64,000 nt of DNA from Dimorphilus gyrociliatus (GCA_904063045.1 CAJFCJ010000011.1:992001-1056000), one strand, 5' to 3'. Numbered from the stretch's first letter, positions 40,358 through 55,672 are shown. The notes: generated from the sequence alone by a model not told the origin. Translations and numbers: made by a program.

Positions 40358-43300
40358 ATGGGAGGTGCAAAAAAATTTTCTGCCGAAAGTAAAAAATTTG
40401 CAGATGAAACGTCATTTCATGGAATACGTTACCTGTCTTCAAAAGATATTAACATCTTTCGAAAGTAAGTAACACTTTTAATATATAATTATTTCTTATT
40501 CTATTAAAGTTTTTAATTAATTCTAGAATAATATGGCTTCTAATAGTTCTCTGTTGTTTTACTGTTTTTGTGTACGTTATGGTAATTAGATTAAAACGGT
40601 ATTATACTTATCCGAAAACAGTTAATGTTGAAGTTAATTTCGTGAACGAGCTACCGTTTCCTAAAATGGTCATTTGCAATACTAATTTATTCAAATCCTC
40701 TTCTCTAGCTGAGAGTGGATTATATGATGTAATTCAAGACAGCTTAGTAAATCCCAATGACGATGATGTAGCTAAAAAAGGTTGTAGTTTATCTTATCAA
40801 CAATCAATTTTCTTATCAAATATATGGATTTTATAGCATGTAATACCTTTACGTATTATCGTCAGTGTTTACCTGACACTTTTTTTTTCAACGACACTGT
40901 GATGTCGAGAACTACAAGCTTCAAAGTAGTATCGCTAACATCATGCCAAAGTCTGTGTAACGGTTTATACAGCTCAACTTGTACAAGCGTCATTTATCAT
41001 AAAATTAATAGAATATGCTATCTGACCCAACTCGACGTCTCACAGAACATTTCACAATTTCTTTCATATAGTAATAAATGTTCTTTTGAATATTATTTTT
41101 TCCGCCGAAAGAGATGCTTAGGTGATATTTAAATTAACATAATTCCATTCATAAACCTTATAATCTGCTTTTTTTCTGAAAAAAAAATACAGTGCAAAGC
41201 GTTCGCTGCAACCGTAAAACAGATAAATGTGAATTAACAACGAGTCATATATGGGATAACATTGTACATCCAGATATCTCTGCTACTAACAGAATCGGTA
41301 AAACTACTTTTAAAAGCTTTAAATAATCTGATCATTGCTTTTTTTTAAATATAATTAGCCAATAGTTACTTTGAATTAGTTCAACACAGGATAAATGTTA
41401 ACCCAAAAGCCTATCTAATTACTCCTTTTATCGATATGAGAAATAAATGTTTAAGATTTTTCTTTAAATACTCTGCACAGACTGAAAGTATCTTTTCGGA
41501 CGAGTCAAGCTTTACTGTAAACATTAAATAATATTTGATAATGAGCATAGTTTTAATTTATGATTATCTTTCAAAGACTTATCTTGCCTCTGAAATCGGA
41601 AGTGAAATTAACATATCTTATTTTAGGATTACTAAAGGTTACCAACTTTCTTTTAAATAGTATAGTCGTCTTTTTAACAAAAGAATTCTTTTTTAAATAC
41701 AAACTCCCTAATTTTGTAGAATATCAAAATGATCGTTTTAATGTATTTTTTCTAAATCTATACGAGAGTTTGAAAGATTTGGAGCAGTTGATATTTAAAC
41801 TTCGCATTGAAATAAATTTAAAATTACCGGGTTTAAAGATCACTTTTGGTGAACTCTTAATACAAAATTGCGACAAATTTCGTAAGAATATTTCGGATTA
41901 AAAATTATCTGGAACTTATATATTTTTCATTCGAAATAGTTGATAATTGTAAGACGACGACAGAAGGTTTTCTTTATGCTGGCAATAATGATAAATCAAT
42001 TTCTGGTAAAAGCTGCTATCCAATTACCAAAAAGTAAGTTTTTTTGAAGAGTTTAATATCTTTAATTGAGCTCGTAATTTAATTCAAACCATAATTCTTT
42101 CTTAGTTTATTAATAGAAGACACAACTTTACCATATGGAACTCATTGCATTAATAATGGTGCAGAAAAATTGCCGATTTGTCTAGTTTCCTATAATAACT
42201 CTGGTATAGTATTAACTTTATATGTTTAGTTATTGACAAACAATTGAATCTTCGATTTCACAAGATGACAAATTAGCCCAATTTGAAAGATATGAGTATT
42301 GTGACATATCCTTTTGTGGTGAGACATTCAATAGGTAACTTTTTAAAAAAAAAGAATAAAGCCATATTTTAAAGCCTGTAAAGAAGAAGAATTTCAATGC
42401 GAAAATAAGAAATGTATACCTAAGTTTTTAACCTGTAATGGCGTTAACGATTGCGAGTCAGGATCGGACGAATCAAATAACTGTGGTATGTCGATAATAT
42501 GTGCTATTCAACTTTCCCGAAAACTAATATTTTATATCTCTAAAGAACGTCTTCAAAATATCGAATGTAACTTTGAAAAATCATATATGTGCGGATATAT
42601 CACATTATATGCTCTTTCTGCTACTCGGATTGTTCTGCAAAGTGGTGGATCACCCAACTCTCTGAATCGTATCGGCCCTCTAGCTGACCATACTTTTAAA
42701 AGTGACTTTGGTCATTATGGCCTATTCGATTCAACTCTTTTGCCTAAAGGAAGCCGTTTAGTAATTAAAAGTCCAAAACATTTTGTCCATGATAGAGACA
42801 ATTGTTTGAGAATAATGGTAACGTTACCGTATAGTGAAGAAAACATATTCTCTCCCTATGGCATAAGAGTATTACTAATTGATGCAAAAGGTTCGATATC
42901 TCATCTAATATTTCAAAATTTAGAAAGAAAACAGACCTTATCTTTTCATCAGCTTCAGATTCTTTTTATTATTCTCAAGTGGGAAATTTTCACAATATAA
43001 CTTATAACAAATGGACGGCCATTGATATACCTATCACTACTATAAGAAAGGATATCGCCTTCCAAATAGAATTTACTTCTTATAGAATGAATTTATCAGA
43101 TATAGGTATTGATGATATAAAAATTCATTCTTCATCATGTGCATTTGCTCACAGCAATATAAACATAGAGCAAACACTTGATTGTCAATCAGATAAGGTA
43201 TTTAAATGTGAAAGACCTTTAAAGACATGTATTGATAAAAAATACATGTGTGATGGAATTGCTCATTGTATAGATGAATCAGATGAATTTAATGAAATAT

Positions 43301-46300
43301 GTGGTAATTATTATATCTGATAAATAAAAATTAATAGATAATATATTAATTTCAATAGAAACTCAAAAGAATATTTCCTGCACCTTTGGTGATTCTAGTT
43401 CGTATTTATGCGGATATAGACAGAGATCATCATATATGGGCTATAGATGGGAAAAATCTGATGAAATATTAAAATTCAATCCATTCGAAATAACCGGAAA
43501 TGGAAAACCAAAAACTGTTAAAGCTGCTCTTATTTCTCCTCGTCAAAATTTCTCTTCAGGAGATTATTGCGTTGAATTTACATATGAGAGTAATACTCTT
43601 CTTTCACTTTACAAGGAAACTGACTTAGATACTATGCTACTATTTAAACTAAATCAAGAGTATGGATTTTTCAAAATGGACTCTGTTGAATTTACAGTTG
43701 ATCATACTCTTTCCCTTAACCTTGTTTTCCTAATAGAAGCTGATGATATTGAAAGAAAAAAGCCTCTCTCCAGTTTTAAATCAATCGACATTTTCAACAC
43801 CAAATGTTCAATTGTCTTCTATAGGAAGTGTAATTATCTTTCCAAGTTTTTTGGATACATAAATTTATACGCTATACTAATTAATTCTATTATTATTAGT
43901 CAGTAACATCTTGTTACACAACCCTCTAAATTGCACATTTATGAATATGAGTGATTGCCATTTTCAAGATGTATCTTCAGGCGTTAATAAGTGGAATCAT
44001 ATCTGTAATAAAATATGCCACTTAGAAGGTTACCTTGACCACCATAGAAATTCAATCAAAGTTGCTTTTATACTAAAGAAATATGATTCATCTTGCATAA
44101 AAATCAAACTCTATTCAAAAATTTTGGAAAAAATTTCTTTTATTAAAGAGCCTATAGGCGAATTTGGCCTTGAAATTAATACTCTTAACCTTAATACCTC
44201 AAGTAATAAGACTAAGAAATTTCTTGTTTTGAGGTATACAAATATACAATATCATAAAAACTGTTCTTTAACTTTTACTTCTCAAATAATTAGGTATTCG
44301 ACATCGTATACTCTATTCATTCCAGCAAATAACACTCAAAATGGGCTTACTATTGAAGCTTTTGTCAATGGATCAGTTGGCGAAGTTTTCATTGAACACA
44401 TTGAACAGATAGAAGGCATTTGTACGTTTCACTCTTTTAATGTTCAACGATATTGATTAAAATAATTATTTTATACAAATAACAACTTTCAAATTAATTG
44501 CATAACTAGCACAAAATACTAAATCTTCTAAAAAAATAGGCGAAGCGGAAAATCCACCTTCAGTCGTTTTTAGAGCTTACCCACCCCCTGCTACATCAAT
44601 TGCACTCCCTTACTATTTGAATAAACTAAAATATAATGTAAATAGTACTATGAGTTTAAAGCCAAGCTCTAAAAAAGAAATGAGAGAAGACTTCCTGCAA
44701 ACAATAACTTTGGAAACATTTAGTGAGACTTTTAATCACAACAGAACTTCATCTCTATTACAGTTTGTTTCATTACATTAAGCCTGCAAAAAATATTATT
44801 TTAGTTTGTTGTTTTCATAGTTGTTCTTGGAAGGGTAAACCATGTCAAGAAAACATGATACAAACGCATTTTTCGAATATAGGAGACTGCTTTACATTTA
44901 ATTATCAACATAATTTCATGGTTTATCAAGCTGGAACAGGACATGGTTTAAAATTATTAGTTGACATAGAAACGTACGATTTTCTTCCAAATATTAAAAC
45001 GCAAATGGGTATAATTGTATCAGCGATTCCCCTTGATGATATTCACTTAATTCAAGATAAAGGCTATGCAATTTTAACTGGAACAAATTCACTTCTTAAA
45101 ATTAAGATAGATGAAGTAAGAATTGTTCTAATATATTTAGACGTAGTAATAATAACAATTATCTTTATGATTCTTTTCAAGATACAAAGTCTTTCTGAAC
45201 CTTACGGAAGTTGTACCGACAAACACTTACAGTACTACTTAAACTCTACATATACATCAAATAAGTGTGTGACACAATGCCATACACAAATGATAGAAGA
45301 AGCGTGCGATTGTAAACCTTCATATGTTTCTGGTTCTAAACGAGATTGTAATTTACTAGAATATCTACTGTGCATTTATCCTCTTATTGGTTTGTTTTTA
45401 TTATTAAAAGACGTTGACAAATGAACATTAAACTTTTTACCTTAGAGAAGAGAGTAAAACCAACATATTGCAAATGTTCTAGTCCATGTAAAACAACAGT
45501 GTATGGAATGGAGTTGTCATCATTAAGTTTAACTTCAGATAACCTTCGTCTCTTGCTGGACGATAAACTTAATTTTGTCCAGAGAAAGTACTCCAATGCT
45601 ATAAACATCAAGTTTAGATTTACGCCGAAATTATTCAATTCAACGATAACGTCGTTTTCATTATTAACTACATATCTTGATAAGAATGATGAGTATATAA
45701 ATAAAAAGCTGAAAAAGGAATATTCTCCCTTTTATCTGGCTGTAGAAAGTTTTTTTGTAATTCTCGAGCCCATCAAATATGATATAACAGAGAAGCTATG
45801 GGATTATAGTAGTATATATATATATATATATATCTTTTTTTGTTTATTTTTATTTATTACATAGTATTCTTTAAAAATATAAATTTCTTTCATTCAGCTT
45901 TCATCGAACAGAAATATCTAAATATGATCGACAAGCCAATCTTTTTAGTAATTCAAAGTTGTTCTACAACTCTTGAAAGTTTATTGTTCATTAAAAGAGA
46001 ACTTTTGAAAAATTCATATGCTTTAACTGAAGATTTTAACTTGAACACTCAGGATATTTATAACAATTTATTACGAGTAATCAAAGTTATATCTGGATTC
46101 AGTACAGATGTAAACGAAGAAATAGTAAATGCCACTGAATTTGACTTTACGTTGTCCTACATTAACGATCAGAGAGTTAAGTTTTTTTCTATCTACTATG
46201 ATGTTGGATTTGTTTTGAATCGACGTTGTTATGATGATTTAGTTCATTTATCGAGCAATTTAACACGTTTTATCAGAATTATTGAACAATTGGACAAACA

Positions 46301-47516
46301 AAATAGTACAGAAAATATTTCGTTACTTGAGAATTCAATTGACTTGGGTGTTTCAAATCTATATAAATTTCTTACATGTCTTAATGGTTTGAAAGATGCC
46401 ATTGGACCTTTTGAAAATGGTAAACGTCAATATAAAACTAATCTTGAACAACTTGAAAACAGTTTGCGATCCTCTCTCACCATAAACGATGAACTGGGTA
46501 AAACCATTCAGAACTTGCGATTAGAAAGTACAAAATACAATGATATGAAAGAAAAGTTTGAAAATAATGTAATAACTATAGCAGAATTGGCTAATTCTTT
46601 GACATCCACTGATTATAAATCAATTAGAAAAAGGCTAAATGAATTCGAAAACGGTGTTACAAAAGTTCTTGTAGAGCCTTTCCTAACAGAAGTTGATCGA
46701 TCCATAGAAAGAGCAGTTGTCTTGTATACTTTTTCAATGACAGCTGTAAATGAACTTTTAATTAATTTGGATATTAACCATACGTCGTCAGATGCTATTA
46801 ATGTCTACAAAAACATAAGAAGTTTTAATATATGGCGCAATCCAAAGTTAGATACTAAACTAAGTTTGGAAGTTCAGTGGCAGGATCCAGATCCCTTCAT
46901 TTCAAGAATTTGGCCGTCGTCACAGAGTTTAGATGAATTCTTATCAGAAAAAGGATCAGCTATTAAGGAAATTAAGAATCTTATACAGAATTTCATGAAA
47001 GAAGCCCTTCGAAAGGTCTGTTGATGAAGAATCAATTTTTATTCTAAATGACCAAAAATCAATTTTAATAAAGGTGGTTGATATCGAAAATGTAGTTGTG
47101 GAAAATACACAAAAGATTAGAGATGTTTTAGATGAATTAGATAACATATTGGCTGCCTATACCCAAGCATCACAAATTGATGATGATTTTATTCGGTTAA
47201 ATATGTTTATCAATAGAAATCAATTGAATGTTATCTTATATTCGTATTTCAGAAAAAATATTGTAGAATTGGAAATTTACTATCCTTCTCTTCAACTTGA
47301 ATCAATAAGTCAAAGAAAGGCTTACGAAATTGAAGACTATTTCGGTAATTTATATAAAAAACTTATATAAAAAATAATAAGTCATAGTTTTCTATCAAAG
47401 GTGATGTTGGTTCATATATGGGTTTGCTACTAGGAGCAAGTGTCATAACTGCACTGGAATTTGTAGACTTTTTACTCTCGGCTCTTTGTAGAAGATCATG
47501 CAAGAAGATTACTTAA
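40358..47516 (+). CDS. DEG/ENaC (ASIC-like) channel with large ectodomain insertions
   Basis: TSFHGIRY (HG motif), TM1, FPKMVICNTN, CSWKG..C, GDCFTFN, GLKLLVD, Cys-rich thumb, KNIVELEIYY, TM2 GDVGSYMGLLLGASV, stop at 47514-47516. Many GT-AG introns; some internal exon boundaries are approximate. Confidence 0.9.
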
Positions 47517-55578: not shown

Positions 55579-55672
55579 GCCCGGATAGCTCAGTCGGTAG
55601 AGCATCAGACTTTTAAGAGAACACTAAATATAAGTGATCTGAGGGTCCAGGGTTCAAGTCCCTGTTCGGGCG
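55579..55672 (+). tRNA. tRNA-Lys(UUU) with a 21-nt intron
   Basis: GCCCGGATAGCTCAGTCGGTAGAGCATCAGACTTTTA-[55616-55636]-ATCTGAGGGTCCAGGGTTCAAGTCCCTGTTCGGGCG; matches the canonical metazoan Lys-TTT once the intron at 37/38 is removed. Confidence 0.95.

What the first reader, a model, noticed from the sequence alone, without database searches (positions are those of the whole stretch)
40837..44600. DEG/ENaC channel carrying a roughly 1,000-aa receptor-like cassette (PAN-MAM-kringle-LDLa-MAM-LDLa-MAM-MAM) in the finger domain
After FPKMVICNTN the frame runs, mostly via phase-1 exons, through an apple domain (CQSLC..CTSVIY..C), a MAM, a degenerate kringle (C..EG..YAG....SGKSC...HC...PIC...EYCDISFC), LDLa (CKEEEFQCENKKCI..CNGVNDCESGSDE), MAM, LDLa (FKC..CIDKKYMCDGIAHCIDESDE) and two more MAM-like domains, then returns to the palm (CSWKG, GDCFTFN). 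The finger is the ligand/protease-gating region of this family, so this may be a channel gated by extracellular protein, glycan or matrix tether. The phase-1 modules suggest exon shuffling.
Basis: partly seen in the sequence, partly recalled or inferred. Interest (0 to 1): 0.78.

Follow-up and report, generated by a model that had tools for sequence, protein, structure and literature searches.

The report
Giant sodium channel with built-in adhesion modules
A small marine worm (Dimorphilus gyrociliatus) has an intact gene for a sodium channel about four times the usual size, because about 940 amino acids of protein-binding modules and a roughly 520-amino-acid helical segment are built into the two outer parts that control opening in related channels; nobody has studied what opens it.

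Summary
Window 40358-47516 (+) reads as one 21-exon gene of about 1,935 aa, with canonical GT-AG introns of 55-139 nt. Its DEG/ENaC (Pfam ASC) core is interrupted after the first finger helix by twelve exons (40837-44421, exactly 940 codons, almost all phase 1-1).

Domain calls in that cassette:
- Firm: LDLa x2 and MAM2.
- Supported through paralogues: PAN and MAM3.
- Pattern, position and weak HMM hits only: the kringle and MAM1.
- No statistical support: "MAM4".

It marks a spiralian subfamily of about 950 aa found in molluscs, nemerteans and Owenia.

The genome is Dimorphilus gyrociliatus. The public model DgyrCDS8565 joins cassette, palm and TM2 but is cut short at the 5' end. At least six paralogous loci keep the same order, TM1-PAN-MAM-kringle-LDLa-MAM-palm. 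Three unnamed ENA proteins carry TM1, a cassette, palm, the long insert and TM2 in one model. An Intoshia protein has PAN-MAM-kringle-LDLa-palm.

No paper describes this design. The scan had already flagged the same design on other pieces of this genome (s1-080183, s1-080186). The channel motifs are intact, but gating by a ligand or tether is inference. No transcript evidence was available. Verdict: a new variant of a known kind.

The parts
40358..40464 (+). Exon 1: start codon, cytoplasmic N-terminus with the His-Gly gating motif (TSFHGIRYL)
   Evidence: First ATG after an in-frame stop. GTAAGT donor at 40465.
40527..40780 (+). Exon 2: TM1, post-TM1 strand (FPKMVICNTN) and first finger helix (GLYDVIQD); ends in phase 1
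   Evidence: ASC profile 21-99, E 7e-16. ASIC5 residues 63-127. hhalign against the spiralian subfamily gives 99% probability over residues 1-71.
40837..41121 (+). Exon 3: PAN/apple module, 8 Cys, phase 1-1
   Evidence: PAN_1 E 0.013, 15.8 bits, below the cut-off. Aligns to paralogue exons at E 2.5e-5 and to Intoshia P0101 residues 206-267 at E 1e-5. The C2 paralogue exon scores 33.3 bits for PAN_1.
41193..41881 (+). Exons 4-6: degenerate MAM-like module (MAM1). Exons are 41193-41297, 41359-41487 (or to 41503) and 41627 (or 41577)-41881.
   Evidence: Only exon 5 hits the paralogue MAM HMM (E 0.04, positions 41-80). It occupies the MAM place in the paralogues' domain order. The boundaries of intron 5 are ambiguous: 139 nt or 73 nt, both in frame.
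41940..42318 (+). Exons 7-9: degenerate kringle with six Cys, split over three exons (41940-42033, 42106-42203, 42265-42318)
   Evidence: No Pfam hit. With a paralogue kringle HMM, the best two of 3,480 window pieces are exon 7 (HMM 6-24, E 0.06) and exon 9 (HMM 71-82, E 0.2). Paralogues have Pfam-positive kringles at this position.
42375..42485 (+). Exon 10: LDL-receptor class A module 1, six Cys and the acidic calcium-cage motif (DCESGSDE), phase 1-1
   Evidence: Ldl_recept_a E 2e-11, 44.3 bits, over the cut-off.
42546..43303 (+). Exons 11-12: MAM2 (42546-42890 plus the first part of 42953-43303), followed in the same exon by LDLa module 2 (about 43180-43300)
   Evidence: MAM N-half E 3e-5 and C-half E 5.5e-4. 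LDLa E 9e-6, 26.2 bits. In the public protein P0001, MAM scores 39.6 bits and LDLa 52.6 bits. These two exons are the top two hits of the paralogue MAM HMM.
43359..43829 (+). Exon 13: MAM3 (divergent), phase 1-1
   Evidence: MAM E 0.006. jackhmmer converges on paralogue MAM domains. hhalign aligns the A.L.SP...CL.F.Y motif in register (E 0.004).
43900..44421 (+).
   Evidence: A 173-codon open exon with 6 Cys and 7 NxS/T sites. No support for MAM from HMM, hhalign, AF2 or the Atlas.
44510..44762 (+). Exon 15: linker and return to the finger/palm. An alternative acceptor at 44540 is the one used in the public model.
   Evidence: In-frame splice candidates. Present in P0001. No significant profile match.
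44821..45389 (+). Exons 16-17: beta-ball, palm and Cys-rich thumb (CSWKGKPC, GDCFTFN); 66-nt phase-0 intron at 45116-45181
   Evidence: ASC profile 153-336, E 3e-24. Matches ASIC1, ASIC2, ASIC5 and ENaC chains at E down to 4e-11.
45446..47344 (+). Exons 18-20: the CKCSSPC motif, then a Cys-poor, Pro/Gly-poor knuckle insert of about 520 aa, then beta11-beta12 (NIVELEIYYPSLQLESISQRKAY). Exons are 45446-45811, 45898-47015 and 47074-47344.
   Evidence: ASC profile 354-411 and 398-434 flank the insert. hhalign anchors both ends to the spiralian subfamily (E 5e-6 and 5e-7). The interior is not significantly alignable. The equivalent insert of Lineus P0044 is all-helical with pLDDT above 90.
47401..47516 (+). 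Exon 21: TM2 with the GAS selectivity-filter motif (GLLLGASVITALE), a short C-terminus and the TAA stop
   Evidence: ASC profile 432-455. Sequence read.

Best explanation
Window 40358-47516 is one intact gene of Dimorphilus gyrociliatus. It encodes a pore-forming DEG/ENaC subunit of about 1,935 aa.

The channel core is complete: HG motif, TM1, palm, thumb, CxCxxPC and a GAS-filter TM2. Two extracellular elements are greatly enlarged.
1. The loop after the first finger helix carries a disulphide-rich cassette of 940 aa: PAN, a MAM-like module, a kringle-like module, LDLa, MAM, LDLa, MAM and one unknown module. It was assembled from phase-1 exons.
2. The knuckle carries a helical extension of about 520 aa, inherited from a spiralian subfamily.

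TM1 serves as the signal anchor, so the cassette is displayed outside the cell, at the top outer corner of the trimer.

Inferred mechanism: the cassette is a built-in binding antenna for extracellular protein, glycan or matrix. Because it hangs on the mobile finger helices, occupancy or pull on it would bias opening of the sodium pore. The helical knuckle extension would act as a stalk or counter-support.

Shown: gene structure, domain content, topology logic, conservation in paralogues and other species, and intact channel motifs. Inferred: a single transcript, trimer formation, ion conduction, and any coupling of the cassette to gating.
For: Gene continuity. All 20 introns are GT-AG and 55-139 nt long, and the reading frame stays open across 21 exons. 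The genome's reported median intron is 66 bp.

Public annotation. DgyrCDS8565 (P0001) already joins kringle, LDLa, MAM, LDLa, MAM, exon 14, palm, insert and TM2 in one CDS.

Paralogues. The same order TM1, PAN, (MAM, kringle), LDLa, MAM, palm occurs at C12, C186, C2 (twice), C26, C64 and C25 (three in tandem), at only 25-50% identity.

Other species.
- ENA proteins P0140, P0051 and P0165 each have the HG motif, TM1, GLYD, about 470 aa holding kringle and/or LDLa (no Pfam cassette domain was recovered in P0165), GxCYTFN, about 550 aa, and GLLLGAS, all in one model.
- Intoshia P0101 has PAN, MAM, kringle, LDLa, more sequence, then palm.

No separate-gene features. The cassette has no start codon with a signal peptide and no stop of its own, and all its modules are extracellular types.

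Core motifs are intact.

Position. In FaNaCs the agonist pocket is formed by finger helices alpha1-alpha3 together with knuckle helix alpha6 (PMC11993918). Those are the two elements enlarged here.

Tree. All cassette-bearing and all long-knuckle channels fall in one clade (SH-aLRT 93).
Against: - No transcript evidence could be reached.
- The public model starts inside the cassette and omits exons 1-6, so the TM1-to-cassette join rests on splice logic and on paralogues and orthologues.
- This copy is the fastest-evolving one (branch 1.97 against a median of 0.54). Its MAM1, kringle and exon 14 are too degenerate for Pfam. Whole-genome protein searches with its exons find only the exons themselves. 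Relaxed constraint is therefore possible.
- Skipping exons 3-14 is in frame, so the main isoform might lack the cassette.
- Nothing shows binding, gating or even conduction.
- A joined full-length model was not searched or folded, under the scan's rules.
Confidence: 0.6

Rival explanations
1. The gene is real and single, but the cassette does not gate the channel. It serves to place, cluster or anchor the channel, for example at cilia, cuticle or matrix, or by homophilic MAM contacts. Alternatively it aids folding and assembly. Opening would be controlled elsewhere, for example by protons, peptides or membrane stretch.
For: MAM, LDLa, kringle and PAN are generic adhesion and binding modules (established knowledge of these Pfam families). 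The relatives of about 950 aa lack the cassette and have only about 40 finger residues, yet keep the same core. Cassette composition varies between paralogues and species.
Against: The cassette is inserted in the mobile finger helices, not at a terminus where a pure anchor could sit more simply. The finger and knuckle are the known agonist and protease control points in FaNaC and ENaC (the ENaC point is from established knowledge).
Confidence: 0.25
2. This copy is a decaying or non-functional paralogue. Its open frame survives, but its modules are degenerating and it no longer makes a working channel.
For: It has the longest branch in the palm tree. Several modules fall below Pfam cut-offs while the paralogues' modules score 80-115 bits. 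Exon 14 has no detectable relatives.
Against: There are 1,935 codons without a stop across 21 exons in a genome where a stop is expected about every 12 codons. All splice sites are canonical. Cys frameworks and the LDLa calcium-cage residues are kept. All channel signature motifs are kept.
Confidence: 0.1
3. There are two transcription units. Exons 3-14/15 belong to a separate or nested gene, or are constitutively skipped, and the channel is made by splicing exon 2 to exon 15 or 16.
For: The public annotation does not join exons 1-6 to the rest. An exon 2 to exon 15 skip is in frame.
Against: - A same-strand intron of about 3.7 kb would be extreme in a genome with a 66-bp median intron.
- The cassette has no signal peptide, no sensible start and no stop.
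- The public model itself runs from the cassette into the palm.
- Full-length one-protein models exist in other organisms.
- The same collinear arrangement has been kept at six or more loci at 25-50% identity.
Confidence: 0.05

Closest known systems
FMRFamide-gated sodium channels (FaNaC; PDB 7YVB, 8ON7) of molluscs and annelids
   Same: Spiralian DEG/ENaC trimers with the same core fold. Their agonist pocket is built from finger helices alpha1-alpha3 and knuckle helix alpha6, the two elements enlarged here. Lineage-specific length changes in alpha1-alpha3 are known in this group.
   Different: FaNaC finger variation is tens of residues, not 940 aa of autonomous modules. FaNaCs have no helical knuckle extension. 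The window gene is not in the FaNaC clade (weak PDB matches; tree). No peptide ligand is implied.
Uncharacterised spiralian DEG/ENaCs of about 950 aa (RefSeq 'uncharacterized' or 'degenerin-like del-10' in Lineus, Tubulanus, Haliotis, Patella, Babylonia, Pecten, Argopecten, Ostrea, Octopus; Owenia models)
   Same: Same clade (SH-aLRT 93). Same knuckle insert of about 480-530 aa at the same site. Same GLLLGAS TM2.
   Different: They have a minimal finger of about 40 aa and no PAN, MAM, kringle or LDLa cassette. The one partial exception is Owenia P0003, which shows a ConA-like lectin hit before the palm.
ENaC alpha/gamma subunits (protease-gated finger) and C. elegans MEC-4/MEC-10 degenerins (extracellular regulatory and Cys-rich domains; tether model of touch)
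   Same: The finger region is used as the regulatory handle. In ENaC, inhibitory tracts are cleaved out of it. In MEC-4, added extracellular domains and links to matrix proteins are thought to transmit force (established knowledge, not tested here).
   Different: Those additions are family-specific sequences of about 20-150 aa, not shuffled PAN, MAM, kringle and LDLa modules. In MEC-4 the matrix partners (MEC-1, MEC-5, MEC-9) are separate proteins, whereas here adhesion modules are part of the channel chain. The RRKR motif at 41103-41114 is not conserved in paralogues.
MAM/LDLa mosaic ectodomains (ALK/LTK MAM-LDLa-MAM, MALRD1, MAMDC4, enteropeptidase) and PAN-kringle proteins (plasminogen/HGF)
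   Same: The same module types, and the same phase-1 exon-shuffling logic (recalled from knowledge; not tested here).
   Different: Those are single-pass receptors or secreted proteins. None has its modules embedded inside the extracellular loop of an ion channel.
Paralogues in the same genome and the scan's earlier findings s1-080183 and s1-080186
   Same: The same architecture (PAN-MAM-kringle-LDLa cassette in the finger) at C25 (three in tandem), C12, C2, C26, C186 and C64.
   Different: The window copy is a separate locus (C11) with 25-50% identity. It has a shorter cassette (940 aa against about 1,700 aa reported for one set) and much more degenerate modules.

Membership tests
DEG/ENaC (Pfam ASC, PF00858) | Cytoplasmic N-terminus with the conserved His-Gly motif before TM1 | tested here: met
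   TSFHGIRYL in exon 1. The same motif occurs in relatives P0140, P0051 and P0165.
DEG/ENaC (Pfam ASC, PF00858) | TM1 followed by the FPxxTxCN strand | tested here: met
   ASC profile 21-99, 58.7 bits. ASIC5 E 1.5e-10. hhalign 99% probability.
DEG/ENaC (Pfam ASC, PF00858) | Palm, beta-ball and Cys-rich thumb (CxFxGxxC, GxCYTFN, thumb cysteines, CxCxxPC) | tested here: met
   ASC profile 153-336, 86.4 bits. PDB ASIC and ENaC matches. CKCSSPC aligned at E 5e-6.
DEG/ENaC (Pfam ASC, PF00858) | TM2 with the G/S-x-S selectivity filter and a conserved Glu | tested here: met
   GLLLGASVITALEF; ASC profile 432-455.
DEG/ENaC (Pfam ASC, PF00858) | Trimeric, amiloride-sensitive, Na+-selective conduction | not testable with these tools
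   Needs expression and recording.
Spiralian long-knuckle DEG/ENaC subfamily (defined here from alignment A1) | Helical insert of about 480-530 aa between CxCxxPC/alpha6 and beta11 | tested here: met
   Both ends are anchored. The window insert is about 520 aa against 477 aa in P0044. Composition is Pro/Gly- and Cys-poor.
Spiralian long-knuckle DEG/ENaC subfamily (defined here from alignment A1) | Sequence homology through the interior of the insert | tested here: inconclusive
   hhalign probability 4%, E 0.0095, though in the right region. No Atlas lead.
Spiralian long-knuckle DEG/ENaC subfamily (defined here from alignment A1) | Groups with the subfamily in a tree of the palm/thumb region | tested here: met
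   A clade of 48 rows with SH-aLRT 93 contains it. It has a long branch and no starred set holds it.
LDL-receptor class A (PF00057) | Profile score over the cut-off, six Cys and an acidic calcium cage | tested here: met
   44.3 and 26.2 bits against a cut-off of 24.1. DCESGSDE and HCIDESDE motifs.
MAM (PF00629) | Profile score over the cut-off (26.4 bits) | tested here: met
   This applies to MAM2. Exon halves score 24.3 and 20.2 bits, and the public protein P0001 scores 39.6 bits. MAM3 scores 16.8 bits plus jackhmmer support, which is inconclusive. MAM1 has one weak exon hit. Exon 14 has none, so it is not met there.
Kringle (PF00051) | Profile match with the six-Cys triple-loop pattern | tested here: inconclusive
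   No Pfam hit on any single exon. Six Cys are present. The paralogue HMM ranks exons 7 and 9 first and second of 3,480 pieces, but at E 0.06 and 0.2. The joined three-exon domain was not scanned, under the scan's rule.
PAN/apple (PF00024) | Profile score over the cut-off (21.4 bits) | tested here: inconclusive
   15.8 bits directly. The homologous paralogue exon scores 33.3 bits.

The most novel reading that the evidence does not exclude
Annelids, and some unidentified relatives, evolved a class of receptor-channels. In these a DEG/ENaC pore is opened or modulated directly by an extracellular macromolecule or by force on a matrix tether. The ligand or tether is captured by an adhesion-module antenna spliced into the finger and braced by a long helical knuckle extension. 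This would be a one-polypeptide version of the multi-protein tether model proposed for nematode touch channels.
Probability: 0.25. Interest if true: 0.85.

Novelty: new variant of a known kind. Interest (0 to 1): 0.62.

Why it matters
DEG/ENaC channels are opened by protons, peptides, proteases or force, always through a compact ectodomain of about 300 aa. This channel has PAN, MAM, kringle and LDLa modules and a helical extension of about 500 aa wired into the two elements that form the agonist pocket in FaNaCs. That would extend the family's repertoire to macromolecular or tethered stimuli.

It also gives a natural construct for testing how movement of the finger is coupled to the pore, because deleting exons 3-14 stays in frame.

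The work also exposes an unstudied subfamily of about 950 aa, widespread in molluscs, nemerteans and annelids. It shows too that the public Dimorphilus annotation fragments these genes, so they are missed in family surveys. The genome paper calls the ENaC repertoire 'canonical'.

Tried and rejected
- Whole-genome protein searches with exon 13 and exon 19 found only themselves.
- The word-indexed search with P0001 found only itself.
- AF2 on exon 14 alone gave pLDDT 30, which is unusable.
- The ESM Atlas gave no usable lead for exon 19 or exon 14.
- hhalign of exons 14, 6 and 15 against the paralogue MAM profile or the subfamily profile was not significant.
- jackhmmer from exons 4, 5, 6, 14, 15 and 19 found nothing.
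I therefore could not see the neighbouring gene calls, for example whether exons 1-6 are annotated as a separate gene, or the source of the ENA proteins.
- None of the 150 representative proteins maps at 90% identity or more to the fetched paralogue loci.
- A furin-type RRKR at the end of the PAN exon was considered as an ENaC-like cleavage site. I set it aside because paralogues have ERER, QRDR or VRKR there.
- An alternative exon 2 donor at 40729 was rejected because profile alignment shows coding sequence continues past it.
- The window is not human: it is D. gyrociliatus contig C11.
- Under the scan's rule, the spliced model was only ever searched exon by exon, by reference. No joined protein was scanned, searched or folded.

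Full report
**What is there**

The window is AT-rich (about 29% GC) and comes from contig C11 (992001-1056000) of a 77.9-Mb assembly. That assembly is Dimorphilus gyrociliatus: a protein 99% identical to the palm exon is DgyrCDS8565 (CAD5119980.1), on a contig of exactly C11's length. It is not human.

Pfam's ASC profile hits five pieces on the + strand:
- positions 21-99 at 40489-40833
- positions 153-336 at 44708-45421
- positions 354-411 at 45418-45861
- positions 398-434 at 46999-47367
- positions 432-455 at 47388-47513

The channel domain is therefore interrupted twice. The first break is about 3.9 kb of DNA after profile position 99. The second is about 1.3 kb near position 395.

**Gene model**

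I enumerated frame-compatible GT-AG pairs between adjacent open stretches and read the sequence. This gives 21 exons from the ATG at 40358 to the TAA at 47514-47516. They total 5,808 nt, or 1,935 codons plus the stop.

- Introns are 55-88 nt, except one of 139 nt that has a 73-nt alternative. The genome's reported median is 66 bp.
- Exons are 31.5% GC and introns 21.3%.
- Stops are expected about every 12 codons at this composition. Open exons of 157, 174 and 372 codons have chance probabilities of 2e-6, 5e-7 and 4e-14.
- Exons 3-14 (40837-44421) sum to exactly 940 codons, and ten of the twelve are phase 1-1. The exceptions are inside the kringle.
- Because exon 2 ends in phase 1 and exon 15 begins in phase 1, skipping the cassette, or any run of its phase-1-bounded exons, would stay in frame.

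**Domain content, exon by exon**

All scans were by reference, one exon at a time. Under the scan's rule I never scanned, searched or folded a joined model.

- Firm: LDLa1 (44.3 bits), LDLa2 (26.2 bits) and MAM2. MAM2's exon halves score 24.3 and 20.2 bits, and the public protein scores 39.6 bits.
- PAN: 15.8 bits directly. The exon aligns to paralogue exons (E 2.5e-5) and to Intoshia P0101 (E 1e-5), and the C2 paralogue exon passes PAN_1 at 33.3 bits.
- MAM3: Pfam E 0.006. jackhmmer converges on paralogue MAMs. hhalign places its A.L.SP...C.EF.Y motif in register.
- Kringle: no Pfam hit. Six Cys are in the right order. An HMM built from paralogue kringles ranks exons 7 and 9 first and second of 3,480 six-frame window pieces, at HMM positions 6-24 and 71-82 (E 0.06 and 0.2). 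The paralogues have Pfam-positive kringles at this place in the order.
- MAM1: only exon 5 hits (E 0.04).
It is a Cys- and glycosylation-site-rich module of unknown fold.

**Where the cassette sits**

Exon 2 aligns to ASIC5 residues 63-127, and the palm starts at ASIC5 residue 185. About 57 residues in ASIC5 correspond to about 1,040 here. Against a 22-sequence profile of the closest subfamily (A1), exon 2 aligns with 99% probability through GLYDVIQD. That stretch is the first finger helix in the AF2 model of the Lineus member.

**The second insert**

Between CKCSSPC (exon 18) and the beta11-beta12 strand NIVELEIYY...QRKAY (exon 20) lie about 520 residues. They are poor in Cys, Pro and Gly. 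Typical family members have about 35 residues here.

- The ends align to the subfamily profile (E 5e-6 and 5e-7). The interior does not.
- More than 20 ASC loci in this genome stop at profile position about 391 inside open frames of 750-1,500 aa and resume at about 399.
- The closest proteins elsewhere are predicted channels of about 950 aa. They come from Lineus, Tubulanus, Haliotis, Patella, Babylonia, Pecten, Argopecten, Ostrea, Octopus and Owenia, and are all unnamed or called 'del-10-like'. They have a short finger of about 40 aa and about 480-530 aa at this same site.
- AF2 on the Lineus protein with A1 gives mean pLDDT 84. The insert (residues 386-867) is all-helical, with helices up to 84 residues long and pLDDT above 90.
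- Foldseek matches only the ASIC core.

**One gene or two?**

The indirect evidence favours one gene.

1. The public CDS runs from kringle exon 8 through the LDLa and MAM modules and exon 14 into the palm, the insert and TM2. Its start is an out-of-frame ATG inside kringle exon 7, which is not a sensible start. It also skips exon 18, which hhalign supports as coding. The C12 paralogue is likewise annotated as a 450-aa fragment (P0007). These genes are fragmented in the annotation.
2. tblastn and Pfam place TM1, PAN, (MAM, kringle), LDLa, MAM and palm in the same order and strand at C12, C186, C2 (twice), C26, C64 and C25 (three in tandem), at 25-50% identity.
3. ENA proteins P0140, P0051 and P0165 each carry the HG motif, TM1, FPAVTxCN (one residue off, FPAVTVCY, in P0051), GLYD, about 470 aa holding kringle and/or LDLa, GxCYTFN, about 550 aa, and GLLLGAS in a single model. 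In P0165 the 470 aa gave no kringle or LDLa hit from Pfam. Intoshia linei OAF70867.1 has PAN, MAM, kringle, LDLa, more sequence, then palm, but its ends are mis-modelled. Owenia P0003 shows a ConA-like lectin hit before the palm.
4. The cassette has no signal peptide, no start and no stop of its own.
5. A 3.7-kb same-strand intron would be far outside this genome's intron range.

**Evolution**

A quick maximum-likelihood tree of the palm/thumb region (114 rows) puts all long-knuckle and all cassette-bearing channels in one clade (SH-aLRT 93). The nine cassette rows fall in an annelid-rich subclade (SH-aLRT 90), which is an unresolved polytomy. One origin of the cassette is neither shown nor excluded.

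The window gene has the longest branch of its clade, and the second longest in the tree (1.97 against a median of 0.54). That fits its degenerate modules. It still keeps every channel signature motif, the Cys frameworks and the LDLa calcium-cage residues. I therefore read it as a fast-evolving but constrained copy rather than a pseudogene.

**How it probably works**

Shown: topology, modules and intact pore motifs.

Inferred: TM1 anchors the chain, and the cassette and the helical extension sit on the top outer corner of a trimer. In FaNaCs, the best-studied spiralian relatives, the agonist pocket is formed by finger helices alpha1-alpha3 and knuckle helix alpha6 (PMC11993918). Those are the two elements enlarged here.

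My best reading is a built-in binding antenna whose occupancy, or the pull on it, biases finger movement and so pore opening. The main rival is that the cassette only anchors or localises the channel.

**Literature**

Searches combining ENaC or degenerin with MAM, kringle, LDLa, knuckle, annelid, Dimorphilus or Intoshia found nothing on this design. The genome paper calls the ENaC repertoire canonical. A 700-sequence DEG/ENaC survey that included Dimorphilus does not contain the word "insertion".

The scan itself had already flagged the same architecture on other pieces of this genome (s1-080183 and s1-080186). This is a further, more divergent paralogue.

Noticed in passing
window 45446-47344: A second insert of about 520 aa, predicted helical, lies in the knuckle between CKCSSPC and beta11-beta12. 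It is shared in site and length with a subfamily of about 950 aa in molluscs, nemerteans and annelids. The Lineus member folds with pLDDT above 90 into a bundle with helices up to 84 residues long.
   Followed up: yes
window 41988-47513: The public model DgyrCDS8565 (CAD5119980.1, 1,337 aa) starts at an out-of-frame ATG inside kringle exon 7 and lacks exons 1-6. It skips exon 18 (45446-45811, which holds the CxCxxPC motif) and trims parts of exons 12, 14 and 20. The C12 paralogue is also annotated only as a 450-aa fragment (P0007).
   Followed up: partly
window 40780/40837 and 44421/44510: The cassette (exons 3-14) is exactly 940 codons and is bounded by phase-1 introns. Splicing exon 2 to exon 15, or skipping any run of exons bounded by its phase-1 introns (every cassette intron except the two inside the kringle), would stay in frame. 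Variable-antenna isoforms are therefore possible.
   Followed up: no
G000:C146:23856-25083 (-): An ASC match (profile 72-391) lies inside a 3,790-aa open frame. This is a far larger insert at the knuckle site than in the window gene.
   Followed up: no
L007/L008 = G000:C11:1062498-1067987 (-), 6.5 kb beyond the window end: There is a run of about ten MAM domains (up to 103 bits), followed by a compact, insert-free ASC gene at C11:1074700-1076082 (-). This is a possible reservoir of MAM exons next to channel genes.
   Followed up: no
P0003 (Owenia fusiformis CAH1775107.1): A ConA-like lectin/Laminin_G_3 hit (E 7e-6) lies upstream of the palm in a 5'-truncated model. It hints that finger inserts of jelly-roll modules are old in annelids.
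   Followed up: no
window 41103-41114: An RRKR (furin-type) motif lies at the end of the PAN exon. Paralogues have ERER, QRDR or VRKR there, so it is probably the PAN 'R.RC' tail rather than a conserved cleavage site.
   Followed up: partly
window 55579-55672 (+): A tRNA-Leu (anticodon AAG) of 94 nt.
   Followed up: partly
P0101 (Intoshia linei OAF70867.1), residues 1-120: The N-terminus looks like a transposase fragment fused by gene prediction, from its sequence and my own recall (not scanned). The model lacks the TM1 and TM2 motifs, so the Intoshia locus needs re-annotation.
   Followed up: no
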